64,000 bases of DNA from Thecamonas trahens ATCC 50062 (Eukaryota; Protista; Apusomonadida). The translations under genes and the position numbers were made by a program. Under the pieces are notes generated by a model, which had not been told where the DNA came from, made no database searches, and saw only the letters and a program-made list of their open reading frames with translations. Location: contig NW_013657649.1 of NCBI RefSeq assembly GCF_000142905.1, positions 310,001 through 374,000 on the forward strand, written 5' to 3'. Numbering within the stretch: position 1 is the first letter of the stretch; every line of letters begins with the position of its first letter. This document shows, one piece after another, positions 54,139-61,408 of the stretch.

Positions 54139-55032
54139 CTGCGCGGTCGAGGTGAGTGGCTGTGAAAAAAAAACCTCCACACGGACACAAATCCGATATC
54201 ACGTGCGGACTCTGCCGACTTGAACGTGGAGCTGTAGAAGGGGACAGGAGGGAACAGATAGAGAGAGAGGAAAGAGAGGGCATGCTGGGGATGCCTACAA
54301 TGAGCATTGGCATGCAAATGTGTGGGTGGTCGTCGTGGGGAGCGGTAATGGAGGGCAGCGGGGAGGGAGACGGCAATAATGCGCATGTGCCACCCATGAT
54401 TCACGAAGGTGGGGATCAATGCCGCCCCCTCCCCCCCCCNNNNNNNNNNNNNNNNNNNNNNNNNNNNNNNNNNNNNNNNNNNNNNNNNNNNNNNNNNNNN
54501 NNNNNNNNNNNNNNNNNNNNNNNNNNNNNNNNNNNNNNNNNNNNNNNNNNNNNNNNNNNNNNNNNNNNNNNNNNNNNNNNNNNNNNNNNNNNNNNNNNNN
54601 NNNNNNNNNNNNNNNNNNNNNNNNNNNNNNNNNNNNNNNNNNNNNNNNNNNNNNNNNNNNNNNNNNNNNNNNNNNNNNNNNNNNNNNNNNNNNNNNNNNN
54701 NNNNNNNNNNNNNNNNNNNNNNNNNNNNNNNNNNNNNNNNNNNNNNNNNNNNNNNNNNNNNNNNNNNNNNNNNNNNNNNNNNNNNNNNNNNNNNNNNNNN
54801 NNNNNNNNNNNNNNNNNNNNNNNNNNNNNNNNNNNNNNNNNNNNNNNNNNNNNNNNNNNNNNNNNNNNNNNNNNNNNNNNNNNNNNNNNNNNNNNNNNNN
54901 NNNNNNCGACCCCCCCCCCTCCCCCCCCCACACTCCCCACACTCCTCGCACTCACCCCACTCCACAGGAGCAGACCGAGCTGTATAGTGCTTGCACTACG
55001 CCTCCTCCCTCCTCCTCTCCCACACACGGACC

Positions 55033-57822
55033 ATGTACTCTTCGCGGTACGCAGGGAGCGAGACGGTGTCGGACCATGGCCACTCGGAGCAAGTAGAGGT
55101 CGGGGGCTCTTCTTCCTCCTCCTCCTCGTCTTCTTCTCCTTCCTCCACTCGCACCTCGCCCAACGTGGCCCGCAAGAGTCGCTCCGAGTCTAACGTGTCG
55201 GGCGTGGGCGACTTGCTGGCCTCGTCGGCCTCGTCGACCTCAGCACGGGCTGACCGGGCTGACCGGGCTGACCGTGGTGACCGTGGTGACCAGGCTGGTT
55301 CTGGGCAGCAAGCCAAGTACATGTCGTCGCCCTCGGGCTCGTCGGACTGTGGTCAGGATGGTGTGCTTCTGGAAGAGGTCAAGCGCTCGCGGTCGCGGGC
55401 CGGACGGTCGTACAACGACGGTCCGCGGTCTCGCCGCTCGCGCTCCCGCCAGCCATCGAACGCTCAGCCGCCGTCCTCTGGCCCGCCGCGGGGGCGGCGG
55501 CGGCGCTCGCGCTCACTCAAGCCACAGGCGCTGACAAGCGTTGGCGCAGGGCCGTCGAGCAAGCGGGCAAAGACTTCGCGTGATTCGTCGGGCCGCTCGT
55601 CACCCACGCCTCCCGATGACAATGGGATTGGCGCTGCGTCTACACGCGGCCGAATCGTGGAAGACACAGATGCCGACGCCGGCGCCGGCCGCAGCAGCTT
55701 GGGTGTCTTGGGCGAGGGCGGAAGAGGCTCGGCCGACAGCGCCGCGGCGGATGAGCGGGCAGCGACGGCGACGCTCGCGCCCGCCGATGGCGATGGCGAC
55801 GGCGACGGCGACGACGAGACCCGGTTCCCGTTTCCCAAGTGTTCAGACCCGGGGCTCCTTGTGGAAGTCCTCATCTACATGGCCTTTCTCATTGTGTTCT
55901 CGTTGGTGGTCTTCAACATGCGCGACCCGTTGTACTCGTTCCTCCACAATGACAACATGAAGGATCTGTTTCTCGACGAGGAGTTTCCGGGCATCGACGT
56001 GCTGAAGACGTTCCGCGACGTGGCGACCAAGGAAGAGTTCTGGCAGTTTTTGCATGGCCCATTCATCAATGGCTTGCTCGGCGACTTTGGCGCCGGCGAG
56101 GGTGTCATCTACGGCGTCAACTGGCTCGTCGGCTCGGCGCGGATGCGGCAAGTCCGTGTCAAGCCCGCGCTGTGCGACGTTCACGCCGACTTTTTCCCGC
56201 TCATCACCCAGTGCTACGGCCGGTACGCGATCGGCGAGGAGGACCGCGAGCCGTACGGGCCCGGCGACGCATGGACATACCGCTCGTGCGGCGAGCTCGG
56301 TTCGGTCTGCAAGCAGTACGCGCGTCTGCGGCGGTACGACGGCGGCGGATATACGCAGGACTTTGGCGCTGGCACTCTAGCGACCGAGTCAGCTCGGCTG
56401 GCGGCGCTTGAGGCCGACAACTGGGTCGACTTGCAGACGCGGGCCGTCTTTATTGACTTTACCACCTACAACCCGACGGTCAACTTGTTTCTGGTGGCGC
56501 AGCTCCAGTTTGAGTTTATGCCCTCTGGCGGCGTGTATCCCGACTTTAAGTTCCGGGTCCTCCGCCTCTATCGGTACGAGGGCACCAACGGGACGCTGCA
56601 GCTTGTGGGCGAGCTCGCGATTGCCATCTTTGTCTGTCTGTTCTTCCTTGAGGAGCTGGTGCAGATGTGCGTGTCGTGTCTCCGCTCGCGGCGGGTCCGG
56701 GCGCTGCGGGCGCAGGGCATTCTGGTAGAGTCGCGCCAGACGCCGTACTTTCGCGACGCGTGGAACTACGTGGACCACCTCAACATTGTCTTCTTCCTCG
56801 TCGTCTTTTACTGCCGGTACAAGGTCGACGCGAACTTTGACGCGCTCAACTTGGTGCCGTCGGACCGGTCGACCTATTTTGACTTTACGCGGCCGGTCAT
56901 GTGGGACGCGGCCGAGAAGTCGCTTCTTGCTTGTAACGCCTTCCTCCTCTGGTTCAAAGTCTTCAAGTTTGCCGTCTTTGCGCCGCGAATGGGCATGATT
57001 GCCAAGGTTGTGGGCAAGGCCTTTCTCCCGCTCTTTTTCTTCATCTTTATGTTCATGTTTGTCCTCTTTGGCTTTGCCCAGGCTGGCGCGCTCGCCTTTG
57101 GCTCGGACGTCGAGGGCTACGATACGCTCGGGACAACCATCTTTACCATGCTCCTCGCCACGCTCGGCGAGTTTGACTTTGAGGGCCTTCGCCACTCCAA
57201 CCGCGGCTTTGGTCCGTTCTTCTTTTTCACCTTTATCATCCTCATCTTTTTCATTGTCCTCTCCATGTTCCTCGCCATTGTCGACAACGCGTACGACGAG
57301 GTCTCGGAAGAGCTCCGGCGCTCGCAGGAGCCGTCGGTCTTTGCCAAGGCGCTCGCCTGGTTCTCGACGACCAAGGTCGGCTCGCGGATGGCGTCGTTCC
57401 TCGAGCTGCAGGATAAGCTGACCGAGATTCGCCGGGCCATCGAGATCGGCGACCTCAACCACGACGGCAAGATCTCGAAGAAGGAACTGCAGATCATCAT
57501 GGACTCGAAGCGCGAGTACTTTGAGGGCACTGCCGCCGACCTGATGGAGCGCTATGACGTCGACAACGACAACATGCTCTCCGAGGCCGAGCGCGCCCGG
57601 TTCTATGCCGACATGGAGCGCGAGCAGACGGCCATCGCTTCTAAGATCGTCTCGCTCCGCGAGGCCAACTCGGAAGAGTTTACCCTCCTCTTTGACCTTC
57701 TCTCCGACCGCATCTCCACCGTAGAGTCGCGCCTGGCTGTCCAGCTGGCCCTGCTGGAGGCGCGGGTCAAGGAGGAGGCCCAGCGGCTCGGCCGTGCCCG
57801 TCTCGGCTCCAGCCGCCCGTAG
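55033..57822 (+). CDS. PKD2: Polycystin-2 (TRPP) cation channel with two EF-hands and coiled coil
   Basis: TM1 LLVEVLIYMAFLIVF; TOP domain NWLVGSARMRQVRV, YDGGGY, NWVDLQTRAVFIDFTTYNPTVNLF; pore LGEFDF, GPFFFFTF…LSMFLAIVDNAYDEV; EF-hands DLNHDGKISKKE and DVDNDNMLSEAE. Confidence 0.92.
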   Translation: MYSSRYAGSETVSDHGHSEQVEVGGSSSSSSSSSSPSSTRTSPNVARKSRSESNVSGVGDLLASSASSTSARADRADRADRGDRGDQAGSGQQAKYMSSPSGSSDCGQDGVLLEEVKRSRSRAGRSYNDGPRSRRSRSRQPSNAQPPSSGPPRGRRRRSRSLKPQALTSVGAGPSSKRAKTSRDSSGRSSPTPPDDNGIGAASTRGRIVEDTDADAGAGRSSLGVLGEGGRGSADSAAADERAATATLAPADGDGDGDGDDETRFPFPKCSDPGLLVEVLIYMAFLIVFSLVVFNMRDPLYSFLHNDNMKDLFLDEEFPGIDVLKTFRDVATKEEFWQFLHGPFINGLLGDFGAGEGVIYGVNWLVGSARMRQVRVKPALCDVHADFFPLITQCYGRYAIGEEDREPYGPGDAWTYRSCGELGSVCKQYARLRRYDGGGYTQDFGAGTLATESARLAALEADNWVDLQTRAVFIDFTTYNPTVNLFLVAQLQFEFMPSGGVYPDFKFRVLRLYRYEGTNGTLQLVGELAIAIFVCLFFLEELVQMCVSCLRSRRVRALRAQGILVESRQTPYFRDAWNYVDHLNIVFFLVVFYCRYKVDANFDALNLVPSDRSTYFDFTRPVMWDAAEKSLLACNAFLLWFKVFKFAVFAPRMGMIAKVVGKAFLPLFFFIFMFMFVLFGFAQAGALAFGSDVEGYDTLGTTIFTMLLATLGEFDFEGLRHSNRGFGPFFFFTFIILIFFIVLSMFLAIVDNAYDEVSEELRRSQEPSVFAKALAWFSTTKVGSRMASFLELQDKLTEIRRAIEIGDLNHDGKISKKELQIIMDSKREYFEGTAADLMERYDVDNDNMLSEAERARFYADMEREQTAIASKIVSLREANSEEFTLLFDLLSDRISTVESRLAVQLALLEARVKEEAQRLGRARLGSSRP

Positions 57823-57826
57823 CGGA

Positions 57827-60808
57827 TCACCCAACTCTGATGACAAGCCGCTGCAGCAGCTCGGGCGTGACTGCTCGCTCATACGCCGCAAGCAGTCGCA
57901 GCCCGCGATTGTTGATGGGAGTTTGCTCCAGGAGCTCGCCGAGTGTGGTCACGACAAAGCCAAACTTGACTCGCATGCCCGGGTCCGGCGTCCATGGCGC
58001 CGGCGGGAGCTCACCGGCATCGCCAACCTGGATGTCCGGAAGTGAGAGCCGGGTGCCAGCGTTGCCGGCCCACAGCCGCCACTCGCCGGCGAGCGAGCCA
58101 ACGCCGACGAGCACGGCCTGAAACATGAGGCTCAGCGCCCGCTCAGCAGTCATGCTCGCCAGCGCGTTGCTGCGGGTTATGCCGAGCCCATGCGCGGCCG
58201 TGACCGTCGCCTTCAGCGCGGCGGCGGCGGCGGCGTCGTCGACGCCGGCCACCGCGGCCAGCGCCGTGAGACAGAGCTCGTCGAGCGGATCCGGCGGCGC
58301 CAGTCGCATCCACCCGTCCAGGCGTGGGAGAAGTGGCTCGCTCGGGTGCCAGGTGAGCGTGACCGGGCAGAGGAACTCGGTCGGCTGGTAGCCCATCTTG
58401 TATGCCATCCGCTCGTTGCCGGGCACATAGTACACCATGTAGTAGTAGCTTGCCACGTCCGGGTGGCCTACCACCCACTCGATCTCCTGCAGCACCGAGT
58501 ACACGCCGAGCTTGAGAAAGGCAAGATCCGGGTCGTACATGCAGTAGTTGGAGACGAGCGCGCCGGGCACGATGTCAACCGCGCACACCATTACTAGTGC
58601 ATTGTCGATGTAGTACCGGTAGTGCCAGGCGCCGTAGTGGTGAGCTACGCCGTCGGTCGCGTCGTCGGTGACAAACGGGTCGTTGACAAAGGTGTTCCGG
58701 AACTTGGACGGCGTCACCTCCGTGTCGTTGTGGAGCGCGGCCTGGTACTTGACGTACAAGTTGTAGGTCGGCTTGTGAAAGTACGGCCTGACACGCTCGA
58801 CACGCAGCGTGTGGGGCGCCGGGTTGGCACCATCGCGCGGCTCCCACTCACCGGCCAGGAATCGACGCATGCGCACCAGCACCCGCCGCTTGGAGCGCGA
58901 CGGCCGGAACTCGCTCGCCAGCAGCCGGATCTGGTACTGCGGACAGCACGAGGCAGCGTTCTCGGGCCAGTAGAGCGAGAGGCCGTAGCGCGAGAAGCCA
59001 CGATCGATGAGGAGCGCGTAGTCCTCCGGCCGCAGCGCGAGGGCCAGGAAGACACAGTACGTCCGGCACGACTCGCCCTTGCGGTGGCAGTATGCGCACT
59101 CGCTGGCGTGAAAGGTCTTGTTGCAGAGGCCAACGAGTGAGCCGCCATGCAGCGCGTTTCGAGCGTTCCACTGCCGCACCGTCTCGGCATCTGCTCGCGC
59201 GTTCGCGTCCTCGGCCGCTTCTCGAGCTGCGACCTCGACAGGCGTCTCCGGTGCAGCCTCGAGCGCAGCTGCGTTGCTCGTAGCCTGGGAGGCGGCACCG
59301 GGGTCGACTGCCAGCTGGGACAGCCGCGACATTGTCTGTTGCGTGGCCTGGTCCGCAGAGTGCTCGCTCGGCCAGGGTCCCGCTTGCCATGACGCGAGCC
59401 GGCGGCGGAGCGCAACAAGTGCGGCGTCATCGCCGTCGAGGTCGGCGACAAGCGCAAGGTGCGCCGACTCGCTGGGCGTGAGACGCGCAGACTCAGGCAA
59501 GTTGGCAAAGTAGTATACCGTGGCCGGGAGGCCAGAGTGTGGCGGCACGAGCTGGAGGGCGGCTAGCGAGTCGCGGGTGCGGAGGAGGCCATGCGGCGAG
59601 CAGGCAGCGAGTTTGGCGGCAGCCTCCAGGTGGCCGGCGTCAACGAGGCGGCCAAAGGCGGATTGGAGGAGGGCAGGCCCATTGATGCGGACGGCGAAGA
59701 CGTGGCCACGGTTTGTCACAAAGGTGAATCCTGCAGCATCAGAGCTGACAGTGGTTGCAAGCAATGCGTCGTAGGTGACCCGGGTCGTGGAGAGGCACGA
59801 TCCCGAGCCAAGGTCAAAGACATGGGCGTAGCCAAGCTGAGTGATGCAGACAACAGCGTTGCATGTGGACAGGGCATGGAGCGCAAGTGGAACGTCGTCG
59901 GCGGCATCGGGCGGGTGCACAAGCGGAACGGTTTGCCGGGCTACCGCGGCAGTGGTGCCGCTCTTGGCGATGTCTACCATGCTGACGACTGCGTGAGCGC
60001 CGGTACCCGCAGCGTAGACCAGAACCAACACGCCAGTCTCGTAGACAACAAAGGCGCAAGCGCGGCCGCTAACGTGTCTTGTCGGCTCACCAAACAGCGA
60101 GCAGAGCTGCACCGCGCCGCCGTCGGCGCGCACGCCGGCGACAGCCAGCCATCTCGAGTCGGGCGAGATGCAGCACGAGGTGATGGCAGCGCCGTCAAGC
60201 TCGGGGATGCGGTGAGCGACGTGGAGAGGGCTCGGCTCTGAGGCGACGTGCCAGCAGTAGACGGCCATGGTGGTGATGAGCGCCAGGGTGTTGTCATTGA
60301 GCCATGTGACAAGCTCGACGTCGTTGTCCATGACACACCTTCGGACAGCGGTGCCGAGCTTGAGATCGACGACTTTGATGCTCCGAGCCGAGCGCAGGAC
60401 CAGGACACCCCCACCTGGTTTGAGCAGGGCATCGTCGACGTCTACATCCAAGATCACAACCTGGCCAGGATCCGCTATGTCGACCATGACGATCCTGGCC
60501 TCGTCCTCGACCGACTCGCGGACACAGAGATGGCTCTCCGACTCGAGCGAGACAGCCCCCGCGACCAAGGCCTCGCCGTCGATTCCCAGGTCCGACAGCT
60601 GCAGACAAAGAGAACGGTAGTGAGTCTCAGATAGTTGCTCTGTCTGCTGCTGCTGCCCACCCGGTGCAACCATCCCCTCGACCTCCTCCATCACCACCAT
60701 CGACGACTGACGACCGATGACCGACGACCGTTCCTGCAGGTGGGGATAGCCATGGCGTACCTTGAGAAGCTTGTGCAGAGTGAGTGGTCTGGCACGTGTG
60801 GCAGCCAT
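57827..60808 (-). CDS. Clathrin heavy-chain terminal domain + linker fused to arginyl-tRNA-protein transferase (ATE1-like); in-frame intron 60599-60760
   Basis: One stop-free ORF. N-part LSDLGI…SLESESHLCVRES…IVMVDIADP…WLNDNTLALIT…AVYCW and EAAAKLAACSPHGLLRT match clathrin TD and linker. C-part CAYC, YALLIDRGFSRYG, SCCPQYQIRL, YNLYVKYQAALHND, AVDIVP…YDPDLAFLKLGVYSVLQEI, YYYMVYY…MAYKMGYQPTEFLCP matches ATE1. Confidence 0.88.
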   Translation of the reverse strand: MAATRARPLTLHKLLKVRHGYPHLQERSSVIGRQSSMVVMEEVEGMVAPGGQQQQTEQLSETHYRSLCLQLSDLGIDGEALVAGAVSLESESHLCVRESVEDEARIVMVDIADPGQVVILDVDVDDALLKPGGGVLVLRSARSIKVVDLKLGTAVRRCVMDNDVELVTWLNDNTLALITTMAVYCWHVASEPSPLHVAHRIPELDGAAITSCCISPDSRWLAVAGVRADGGAVQLCSLFGEPTRHVSGRACAFVVYETGVLVLVYAAGTGAHAVVSMVDIAKSGTTAAVARQTVPLVHPPDAADDVPLALHALSTCNAVVCITQLGYAHVFDLGSGSCLSTTRVTYDALLATTVSSDAAGFTFVTNRGHVFAVRINGPALLQSAFGRLVDAGHLEAAAKLAACSPHGLLRTRDSLAALQLVPPHSGLPATVYYFANLPESARLTPSESAHLALVADLDGDDAALVALRRRLASWQAGPWPSEHSADQATQQTMSRLSQLAVDPGAASQATSNAAALEAAPETPVEVAAREAAEDANARADAETVRQWNARNALHGGSLVGLCNKTFHASECAYCHRKGESCRTYCVFLALALRPEDYALLIDRGFSRYGLSLYWPENAASCCPQYQIRLLASEFRPSRSKRRVLVRMRRFLAGEWEPRDGANPAPHTLRVERVRPYFHKPTYNLYVKYQAALHNDTEVTPSKFRNTFVNDPFVTDDATDGVAHHYGAWHYRYYIDNALVMVCAVDIVPGALVSNYCMYDPDLAFLKLGVYSVLQEIEWVVGHPDVASYYYMVYYVPGNERMAYKMGYQPTEFLCPVTLTWHPSEPLLPRLDGWMRLAPPDPLDELCLTALAAVAGVDDAAAAAALKATVTAAHGLGITRSNALASMTAERALSLMFQAVLVGVGSLAGEWRLWAGNAGTRLSLPDIQVGDAGELPPAPWTPDPGMRVKFGFVVTTLGELLEQTPINNRGLRLLAAYERAVTPELLQRLVIRVG

Positions 60809-61408
60809 CCTGCACAGAGAAGAAGGAGACCTTGTATATTGCGCACGCGCGCGTGTGTGTGTGTGTGTGGGGGGGGGGGGGGTGCGTGTGGTGCAGGTCG
60901 TCGAGGGCAGGTGGCCTTGGTGTGGTTGGGGGGAGCTTGTGCCGGTCTTGAGGCTTCATTGATGATGCGAACGGATAACCCAAGAACAGCTTTGACAGAG
61001 CCAGACAGAACAGGTTTTGAGCACGCGCAGGAGGGGGGGGGGGGGGGGGGGGGGCTACTTCTCACCACCGATGACCACCATCACCCCCTAGTATACCTTG
61101 CCCATGATAGTAACCACATCCCCAACCTTTCTGATCCATCCATTCAACTCGCAAGTTGGCGAGCTGGCAGTCCTCCTAATCTTTGCACATCAATGGACGG
61201 AGCGGTGAAGCGGACGAGTGGCACCGTGGTTCATCGTCTGTTCCACATCAGGAACATTGGCCACACCGGACGACGACGCCAGCAACCAGCCAGACGCACC
61301 AACCACCGCCACACGACTCGACCGACCACGAGCACACACATACACACATAGAGAAAGCAAGAAAGAGAGAGAGAGAGACGTACAGAGGTGCATACACATA
61401 TAACTGTC

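What the first reader, a model, noticed from the sequence alone, without database searches (positions are those of the whole stretch)
57827..60808. Clathrin terminal-domain–ATE1 arginyltransferase fusion protein
Seen: one continuous reading frame encodes a divergent clathrin heavy-chain beta-propeller (~60808-59700), the clathrin linker helices (~59680-59440), an Ala-rich spacer, then a complete ATE1 (ATE_N Cys motifs CAYC/SCCP at ~59100-58930; ATE_C with YDPD…LGVYS and MAYK). There are no CHCR legs or trimerisation domain. Removing the GTACGC…GACTCAC…CTGCAG intron (60599-60760) makes the N-terminus align cleanly with the clathrin start. Known: the clathrin terminal domain binds clathrin-box peptides of adaptors, and ATE1 arginylates N-terminal Asp/Glu/oxidised Cys in the N-degron pathway and is normally a stand-alone enzyme. 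Inference: this may be an arginyltransferase that uses a borrowed clathrin propeller to localise to coated pits or to capture adaptor substrates, coupling membrane traffic to arginylation. I know of no described protein with this architecture.
Basis: partly seen in the sequence, partly recalled or inferred. Interest (0 to 1): 0.88.

Follow-up and report, generated by a model that had tools for sequence, protein, structure and literature searches.

The report
Clathrin propeller fused to arginyltransferase
In the protist Thecamonas trahens one gene joins a fast-evolving copy of clathrin's peptide-binding propeller to a complete arginyl-tRNA protein transferase; no other protein found has this layout, but the propeller has lost every known adaptor-binding residue, so it probably docks something other than clathrin adaptors.

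Summary
Observation confirmed. Window 57827-60808 (-) is one 993-codon frame. Public model XP_013756662.1 (939 aa, Thecamonas trahens) removes exactly the proposed intron. It encodes a clathrin terminal domain and linker, a 116-aa Ala-rich spacer, then a complete ATE1 (PDB hits E 2e-45 and 7e-44; confident AF2 models).

It is an extra paralogue: the genome also has a canonical clathrin heavy chain, a canonical ATE1, a stand-alone divergent ATE and a divergent propeller-only ORF.

No other protein among 1.84 billion cluster representatives matches both halves. Only one 142-aa marine metatranscriptome fragment (58% identical) resembles the ATE half closely.

The architecture looks real and undescribed. 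Recruitment to coated pits or clathrin-box adaptors is not supported: the tested key residues of all four binding sites are replaced, although the genome's canonical heavy chain keeps the nine it could be scored for. The ATE half keeps the Zn cysteines, Arg pocket and catalytic Lys, but near-invariant residues around the acceptor site are changed.

Best reading: an active arginyltransferase retargeted by a repurposed docking propeller.

A single mRNA across the junction is not proven, because the nature of the contigs spanning it is unknown.

The earlier 'mini-clathrin' note concerns the propeller-only ORF, not this fusion.

The parts
60761..60808 (-). Exon 1: ATG plus 15 codons (MAATRARPLTLHKLLK). 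It supplies the N-terminal strand of the clathrin terminal domain.
   Evidence: Sequence read. The spliced public model P0001 aligns ungapped to clathrin residues 6-65.
60599..60760 (-). Intron of 162 nt with GT...AG ends. It is in frame and stop-free, so a retained-intron isoform of 993 aa is possible.
   Evidence: GTACGC...CTGCAG. The 939-aa NCBI model equals 993 minus 54 codons, with query 69 matching model 15. Its codon-phase GC is coding-like.
59681..60598 (-). Seven-bladed clathrin-type beta-propeller (ORF residues 71-376), highly diverged.
   Evidence: PDB phmmer E 2e-45. AF2 pLDDT 87.5 and pTM 0.84. The top 37 Foldseek hits are all clathrin terminal domains, TM 0.82-0.87. It groups with the genome's own heavy chain (SH-aLRT 97) on a branch about 12 times longer.
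59453..59680 (-). Clathrin linker helices (residues 377-452). About 29 residues of the Clathrin-link/first helix segment are missing compared with heavy chains.
   Evidence: Pfam Clathrin_H_link 1e-9. The alignment gap is visible. Helices 307-385 of the AF2 model.
59105..59452 (-). Ala-rich spacer (residues 453-568; 28 Ala of 116), probably a flexible tether. It contains the only in-frame Met of this stretch (M493).
   Evidence: Composition and Met position. Codon-phase GC resembles the linker. An RNA-library contig at 59115-59373 and unbroken contigs at 58322-60215 and 58565-59545 cover it.
58883..59104 (-). ATE_N domain (residues 569-642) with the Zn/Fe-S cysteines C571, C574, C621 and C622. 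klAte1 Arg80 is replaced by Ser606.
   Evidence: Pfam 2e-15. Residue mapping.
58367..58765 (-). ATE_C GNAT-fold catalytic domain (residues 682-814). The Arg pocket (S753, S771, E775, Y789), Y803 and catalytic K804 are retained.
   Evidence: Pfam 1.5e-28. Mapping. AF2 core pLDDT above 90 and best match human ATE1, TM 0.72.
57830..58366 (-). C-terminal region (residues 815-993) of low model confidence. Its end ('PDPGM...' tail) is shared only with the stand-alone C9 paralogue.
   Evidence: homology to the C9 ORF up to residue 935 of P0001. AF2 pLDDT below 50 for most of it.
57827..57829 (-). Stop codon. It lies 4 nt from the stop of the convergent PKD2-like gene.
   Evidence: ORFs 54991-57822 + and 57827-60808 -.

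Best explanation
This is a lineage-specific extra arginyl-tRNA-protein transferase. Its N-terminus is a partial duplicate (terminal domain plus linker) of the organism's own clathrin heavy chain, tethered to the enzyme by a flexible spacer of about 115 aa.

Shown:
- The two halves lie in one frame and one annotated gene.
- Both halves fold confidently.
- The enzyme keeps the Zn site, the arginine pocket and the catalytic Lys.
- The tested key residues of all four known clathrin peptide-binding sites are replaced.
- Several near-invariant residues around the acceptor-peptide site are replaced.

Inferred:
- The enzyme still transfers Arg from Arg-tRNA.
- The propeller now serves as a private docking platform for a different ligand or substrate, not for clathrin-box adaptors.
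- The remodelled acceptor site gives it a substrate range different from canonical ATE1.
- Lacking legs and a trimerisation domain, it cannot join the clathrin lattice.
For: One ORF with domain hits of E below 1e-40 for each half. The public single-gene model XP_013756662.1 has the predicted intron.

Unbroken contigs with no mismatches span the junction, and an RNA-library contig lies in the spacer. The propeller frame is maintained (0.05% of shuffles stay open). AF2 and Foldseek identify a clathrin terminal domain (TM 0.82-0.87) and human ATE1 (TM 0.72).

The genome has separate canonical CHC and ATE1 genes. The propeller groups with the organism's own CHC on a branch 12 times longer. The ATE half forms a clade with the stand-alone C9 paralogue and the marine fragment P0086 (SH-aLRT 93).

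Catalytic residues are kept: C571/C574/C621/C622, Y573, Q689, H693, Y755, S753, S771, E775, Y789, Y803 and K804 (residue roles from PMC9351520 and PMC11283454).

Binding-site residues are replaced: Q89K, F91V, Q152A, I154T, Q192R, R188G, F9L, E11K, Q14K, Q16S and N17D. The canonical CHC keeps the nine it could be scored for; its N-terminal Royle-box residues lie upstream of the piece examined (site list from PMC5182127).

Changes around the acceptor site: R56/klR80 to S, S58 to Y, F318 to T, G407 to V and K415 to R, at positions 95-100% conserved in 142 relatives.
Against: No read-level proof of a single mRNA. The runs that hold the junction-spanning contigs are of unknown type, and none covers the intron. 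The spacer alone stays open in 14% of shuffles and holds an in-frame Met (M493), so a stand-alone ATE isoform is possible.

Only one species shows the fusion, so conservation cannot be used as evidence. The orthologue fragment P0086 lacks its N-terminus.

The role of klAte1 Arg80 is disputed (substrate recognition in PMC9351520, structural in PMC11283454), so altered specificity is an inference. The fast evolution of the propeller could also mean relaxed constraint. No activity or binding data exist.
Confidence: 0.55

Rival explanations
1. One reading: the propeller still binds clathrin-box, W-box or arrestin-box motifs of adaptors. It thereby takes the arginyltransferase to coated pits or lets it arginylate adaptor proteins.
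For: The fold is unmistakably that of a clathrin terminal domain. The hydrophobic arrestin-box residues W164 and L183 are kept. Clathrin-binding motifs are degenerate and bind several sites (PMC5182127).
Against: The residues whose mutation abolishes binding are all changed in the fusion: Q89, F91, Q152, I154, Q192, F9 and E11. E11K is itself a known disabling mutation. The same genome's canonical CHC keeps those it could be scored for (Q89, F91, Q152, I154, Q192), and the C4 propeller-only ORF keeps T87, Q89 and F91. The branch is 12 times longer than that of the canonical CHC.
Confidence: 0.12
2. Gene-model over-merging. The locus makes two products: a propeller-only protein, and a stand-alone ATE started at M493 from an internal promoter. 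Alternatively the propeller part is an untranslated or decaying leader, and the full fusion is rare or absent.
For: The spacer is stop-free in 14% of shuffles, and M493 lies 78 residues before the CxxC motif, within the range seen in relatives (up to 153). The only clear RNA contig in the spacer (59115-59373) does not reach the linker. GC3 differs between the halves, 0.75 against 0.85.
Against: There is no stop codon anywhere between the propeller and the end of ATE, so a propeller-only product has no terminator. The propeller frame is clearly under selection and folds confidently. Contigs run unbroken across 58322-60215. The public annotation gives one gene. GC3 varies from 0.75 to 0.90 between genes anyway.
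Confidence: 0.2
3. The ATE half is a pseudo-enzyme, or has changed chemistry through a different aminoacyl donor. It would then act as a binding scaffold rather than an arginyltransferase.
For: Substitutions at near-invariant positions: R56/klR80 to S, S58 to Y, F318 to T, G407 to V, K415 to R and klC298 to N. R80E abolishes klAte1 activity (PMC9351520).
Against: All residues of the arginine pocket (S255, S273, E277, Y289), the catalytic K304, Y303, Y25, H303 (human numbering) and the four Zn cysteines are retained. The hydrophobic replacements seen in the Leu-transferring Bpt are absent. Four other relatives also have Ser at klR80. K415R is conservative.
Confidence: 0.1

Closest known systems
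ATE1 arginyl-tRNA-protein transferase (Pfam ATE_N PF04376 + ATE_C PF04377; human 8TZV, yeast 7TIF/8E3S, K. lactis 7WG1)
   Same: Both Pfam domains score above their cut-offs. The protein is 34% identical to human ATE1 with a matching fold (TM 0.72). The Zn cysteines, Arg pocket and catalytic Lys are conserved. It is of the compact type, with no large insert between ATE_N and ATE_C.
   Different: It has 570 residues in front of the CxxC motif, against a median of 21 and a maximum of 153 in 137 relatives. It carries substitutions at near-invariant acceptor-site positions. It belongs to a divergent paralogue clade separate from the organism's canonical ATE1.
Clathrin heavy chain terminal domain and linker (1BPO; Pfam Clathrin_propel, Clathrin-link, Clathrin_H_link)
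   Same: A seven-bladed propeller followed by linker helices. All top fold matches are clathrin terminal domains. Phylogenetically it derives from the Thecamonas heavy chain.
   Different: It has no CHCR legs, no trimerisation domain and no light-chain region. About 29 aa are deleted at the propeller-linker junction. All four adaptor-peptide sites are substituted at the tested key residues. It is only 25-34% identical to heavy chains, and the Pfam Clathrin_propel and Clathrin-link models do not score.
Stand-alone divergent ATE paralogue of the same genome (G000:C9:557415-558888) and MERC fragment P0086 (ERR1711991_91191)
   Same: They share the loss of klR80 and klC298, and the K415R change. 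P0086 also shares the G407V change. C9 shares the C-terminal tail. They form a clade with the fusion's ATE half.
   Different: The C9 gene starts with a Met 16 residues before its CxxC motif and has no propeller. P0086 is a 142-aa fragment whose N-terminus is unknown.
Other terminal-domain-only or ATE add-on proteins: C4 'mini-clathrin' ORF of the same genome; P0146 (TD + linker + SH3, Glandiceps talaboti model); P0056 (ATE + UBA); P0042 (ATE + CAP)
   Same: They show that both the clathrin terminal domain and ATE occasionally occur in non-canonical architectures.
   Different: None combines the two domains. The add-ons to ATE are internal or C-terminal, not an N-terminal propeller.

Membership tests
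ATE1 arginyltransferase family | ATE_N and ATE_C domains above Pfam gathering scores | tested here: met
   ATE_N scores 57.2 bits (cut-off 27) and ATE_C 100.3 bits (cut-off 25).
ATE1 arginyltransferase family | Four metal-binding cysteines (klAte1 C23, C26, C95, C96) | tested here: met
   C571, C574, C621 and C622. Residue roles from PMC9351520.
ATE1 arginyltransferase family | Arginine pocket S255/S273/E277/Y289 and catalytic K304 (klAte1 numbering) | tested here: met
   S753, S771, E775, Y789 and K804, each matching the family majority (roles).
ATE1 arginyltransferase family | Basic residue at klAte1 R80 (human R56), proposed to recognise the acidic N-terminal residue | tested here: not met
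   The fusion has Ser606. The position is Arg in 135 of 143 relatives. Its role is disputed: PMC9351520 calls it essential, whereas PMC11283454 places it more than 10 A from the substrate and treats it as structural.
ATE1 arginyltransferase family | Arg-tRNA-dependent arginylation of N-terminal Asp, Glu or oxidised Cys | not testable with these tools
   This needs a biochemical assay.
Clathrin heavy chain | N-terminal seven-bladed propeller of clathrin type | tested here: met
   PDB E 2e-45. AF2 model against PDB gives TM 0.82-0.87 and rmsd about 2.5 A.
Clathrin heavy chain | Seven CHCR repeats (PF00637) forming the leg | tested here: not met
   No PF00637 hit in the ORF. The canonical gene on C5 has seven.
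Clathrin heavy chain | C-terminal trimerisation and light-chain-binding region | tested here: not met
   After the linker the sequence continues into the spacer and ATE.
Clathrin heavy chain | Adaptor-peptide sites: clathrin box Q89/F91, W box Q152/I154, arrestin box Q192 (W164, L183), Royle box F9/E11 | tested here: not met
   The fusion has K/V, A/T, R (with W164 and L183 kept) and L/K at these positions. The canonical Thecamonas CHC keeps Q89, F91, Q152, I154, R188 and Q192 (site list).

The most novel reading that the evidence does not exclude
This may be the first natural arginyltransferase with a built-in substrate-docking domain. A clathrin-derived propeller, re-evolved to recognise a new short motif, would deliver particular proteins to a tethered ATE whose acceptor pocket has co-evolved. 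That would be targeted arginylation, analogous to a substrate-receptor subunit of an E3 ligase, rather than selection by the N-terminal residue alone.
Probability: 0.4. Interest if true: 0.7.

Novelty: new variant of a known kind. Interest (0 to 1): 0.5.

Why it matters
ATE1 is normally a stand-alone enzyme, and how it chooses substrates beyond the N-terminal residue is an open question. A natural fusion to a peptide-binding propeller would be a ready-made example of docking-directed arginylation. It offers a simple experiment: identify what the propeller binds, and that should point to the substrate.

The fusion also shows that the clathrin terminal domain can be duplicated away from the coat and repurposed. 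Thecamonas has at least two such extra copies.

The practical value is limited. Only one species is known to carry the fusion, the sequence is already public, and nothing is known about its expression or activity.

Tried and rejected
1. Whole-protein alignments for a single AF2 model (A4, A5). MAFFT placed the family's ATE_N on the propeller in A4, and mis-registered the clathrin rows in A5. Both were discarded, the halves were modelled separately, and so no inter-domain prediction was made.

2. Searches for a second fusion, all blank apart from the protein itself:
- word search over the full length;
- junction-only search;
- two metagenome contig scans;
- exact-contig look-up of P0086;
- ESM Atlas.

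3. Long ATE relatives (P0056, P0087, P0065, P0100, P0102, P0117) were suspected of N-terminal add-ons. Their extra length turned out to be an internal insert.

4. The GC3 difference between the halves was considered as a sign of separate genes. It was rejected because genes of this genome range from 0.75 to 0.90.

5. A pile-up of metatranscriptome contigs at 58216-58249 is a short GC-rich Ala-run matched by unrelated organisms, with 2-4 mismatches and loose ends. It was not used as evidence of expression.

6. The first careful ATE tree timed out. The reported tree is the quick method on every second relative.

The spliced form was used only as the public protein P0001. The propeller model uses exon 2 alone and so lacks the first 16 residues. 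The C9 paralogue was analysed as separate exon ORFs.
Full report
WHAT IS THERE

The window is G000:C31:310001-374000 of a 28.7 Mb assembly in 131 contigs. The minus-strand ORF at 57827-60808 is 993 codons long.
- Pfam finds Clathrin_H_link (380-435, 1e-9), ATE_N (569-642, 2e-15) and ATE_C (682-814, 1.5e-28). It finds no CHCR repeat.
- Against PDB sequences, residues 69-376 match the clathrin terminal domain (1bpo, E 2e-45) and residues 380-452 match its linker. The C-terminal half matches human ATE1 (8tzv, E 7e-44).

The only full-length database match is a 939-aa protein of Thecamonas trahens ATCC 50062 (KNC50966.1 / XP_013756662.1 / A0A0L0DFM5). It is named 'arginyl-tRNA-protein transferase 1' and carries PF13838, PF04376 and PF04377.
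- The spliced protein aligns without a gap across the exon junction to clathrin residues 6-65. This is good evidence that the intron is real.
- The intron is in frame and stop-free, so a retained-intron isoform is possible.

STRUCTURE

The two halves had to be modelled separately, because joint alignments were mis-registered.
- Propeller plus linker, exon 2 only and so lacking the first 16 residues: mean pLDDT 87.5 and pTM 0.84 with only 8 aligned sequences. Its 37 best PDB matches are all clathrin terminal domains (TM 0.82-0.87, rmsd about 2.5 A). Generic WD40 propellers follow some 15-20 orders of magnitude weaker in E-value.
- ATE half: the core has pLDDT above 90 and best matches human ATE1 (TM 0.72, rmsd 2.5 A, 34% identity). 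Residues of about 865-980 are of low confidence.

IS IT ONE GENE?

For:
- There is no stop codon between the propeller and the end of ATE.
- The propeller plus linker frame stays open in only 0.05% of dinucleotide shuffles.
- The spacer has the same codon-phase GC pattern as the linker, unlike the flat pattern of the upstream DNA.
- Contigs from small runs of the same organism cover 58322-60215 and 58565-59545 without a mismatch.
- A seawater metatranscriptome contig lies at 59115-59373, inside the spacer.

Caveats:
- The junction-spanning runs are of unknown library type, and none covers the intron. RNA origin is therefore only suggested, by the fact that runs of 8-9 Mb each hold 46-74% of this stretch.
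- The spacer alone is stop-free in 14% of shuffles, and it contains one in-frame Met (M493).
- An additional stand-alone ATE isoform therefore cannot be excluded.
- I put the single-polypeptide reading at about 0.75.

GENOMIC CONTEXT OF THE FAMILY

The genome also holds several related genes.
- A canonical heavy chain on C5, with seven CHCR repeats.
- A canonical ATE1 on C92.
- A stand-alone divergent ATE on C9. It starts 16 residues before its CxxC motif and is split by frame changes that look like introns.
- A very divergent propeller-only ORF on C4. This is probably the scan's earlier 'mini-clathrin' note s1-758390.

The fusion is therefore an extra copy, not the cell's only clathrin or ATE.

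ORIGIN

In a small tree the fusion's propeller groups with the Thecamonas heavy chain (SH-aLRT 97). Its branch is about 12 times longer (2.76 against 0.22). It does not group with the other long branch (C4), so long-branch attraction is not the cause.

The ATE half forms a clade with the C9 paralogue and with P0086, apart from the canonical ATE1 (SH-aLRT 93; quick method, and C9 is a long branch). P0086 is a 142-aa fragment from the MERC/Tara metatranscriptome catalogue, 58% identical to the fusion.

Shared rare states support that clade:
- klR80 is lost and klC298 is Asn;
- human K415 is Arg;
- Gly407 is Val in the fusion and P0086 only;
- the fusion and C9 share a C-terminal tail.

The likely history has three steps. 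An ATE duplicate diverged in the apusomonad lineage. It duplicated again. One copy then acquired a duplicated 5' part of the heavy-chain gene.

UNIQUENESS

- In an exhaustive HMMER pass over 1.84 billion cluster representatives, only the protein itself matches both halves. The next hits reach at most 184 bits on the ATE half or at most 171 bits on the propeller.
- In 137 relatives the N-terminus before the CxxC motif has a median of 21 residues and a maximum of 153, against 570 here.
- ESM Atlas neighbours each cover one half only.
- Two metagenome scans and a junction-only search were blank.
- No paper combines Thecamonas with arginyltransferase, and none describes a clathrin-ATE1 fusion.

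FUNCTION: THE PROPELLER

Muenzner et al. (PMC5182127) list the residues whose mutation disables each site. The fusion compares as follows.
- Clathrin box Q89/F91: K/V in the fusion, with T87S, K96G and K98A as well.
- W box Q152/I154: A/T, with F27A and I170V as well.
- Arrestin box Q192: R, and R188 is G. W164 and L183 are kept.
- Royle box F9/E11/Q14/Q16/N17: L/K/K/S/D. E11K is itself a published disabling mutation.

The canonical Thecamonas heavy chain keeps Q89, F91, K96, F27, Q152, I154, I170, R188 and Q192. The C4 ORF keeps T87, Q89 and F91.

The propeller is therefore unlikely to bind canonical adaptor motifs. Lacking legs, it also cannot enter the lattice.

FUNCTION: THE ENZYME

Residue roles come from Kim et al. 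(PMC9351520) and from the human ternary complex (PMC11283454).

Kept:
- the Zn cysteines;
- Y25;
- Y87;
- the arginine pocket S255/S273/E277/Y289;
- Y303 and the catalytic K304;
- human Y298, Q299, H303 and Y367.

Changed at near-invariant positions:
- klR80/human R56 to Ser (Arg in 135 of 143 relatives);
- human S58 to Tyr (Ser in 129 of 142; no relative has Tyr);
- F318 to Thr (Phe in 140 of 142; no relative has Thr);
- G407 to Val (Gly in 142 of 142);
- K415 to Arg (Lys in 141 of 142);
- klC298 to Asn.

The role of R80 is disputed: it is essential for acidic-residue recognition according to PMC9351520, and structural, more than 10 A from the substrate, according to PMC11283454. I read the pattern as an enzyme that still uses Arg-tRNA but has a remodelled acceptor site.

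VERDICT

The architecture is real in the genome and in the public annotation, and it is so far unique.

The best explanation is a neofunctionalised arginyltransferase paralogue that uses a repurposed clathrin-derived propeller as a docking module (confidence 0.55).

Noticed in passing
G000:C4:402201-403085 (L018:775-2847, + strand): A third clathrin-propeller gene: a 690-aa ORF with a very divergent terminal domain and no legs (21-30% identity to the other clathrin terminal domains, no Pfam hit). Unlike the fusion, it keeps clathrin-box residues T87, Q89 and F91. It is probably the scan's earlier 'mini-clathrin' note.
   Followed up: partly
G000:C9:557415-558888 (L014:2415-3888, + strand): A stand-alone divergent ATE paralogue, split over at least three frames (likely introns). 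It has Ala at klR80 and Asn at klC298, and a C-terminal tail homologous to that of the fusion.
   Followed up: partly
window 57822-57827: The stop codons of the convergent PKD2-like channel gene (54991-57822, +) and the fusion gene (57827, -) are 4 nt apart, so their 3' UTRs must overlap. One contig (X10) runs across both gene ends.
   Followed up: no
window 57704-58407 and 59115-59373: Contigs identical or nearly identical to Thecamonas trahens occur in 'subsurface' and 'seawater' metatranscriptome runs from independent studies. Either this organism or a near-identical strain is present, or there is carry-over.
   Followed up: no
window 58216-58249: A 33-nt GC-rich stretch encoding an Ala run attracts many unrelated metatranscriptome contigs (depth 85, 2-4 mismatches, loose ends on both sides). 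This is a mapping artefact, not expression.
   Followed up: yes
window 60835-60894 and 61019-61060 (minus strand upstream of the ATG): A (CA)n/(CG)n microsatellite and a C run of about 20 nt lie just upstream of the start codon. A 'tgcag' acceptor-like motif lies 2 nt upstream of the ATG, which may mark a 5'-UTR intron.
   Followed up: no
P0146 (XP_078000561.1, Glandiceps talaboti); P0056; P0042: Other unusual architectures seen among the hits: clathrin terminal domain + linker + SH3; ATE with an internal UBA domain; ATE with a C-terminal CAP domain.
   Followed up: partly
window 60599-60760: The annotated intron is in frame, stop-free and has coding-like codon-phase GC (0.72/0.39/0.67). A retained-intron isoform with 54 extra residues inside the first propeller strand region is conceivable.
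   Followed up: no
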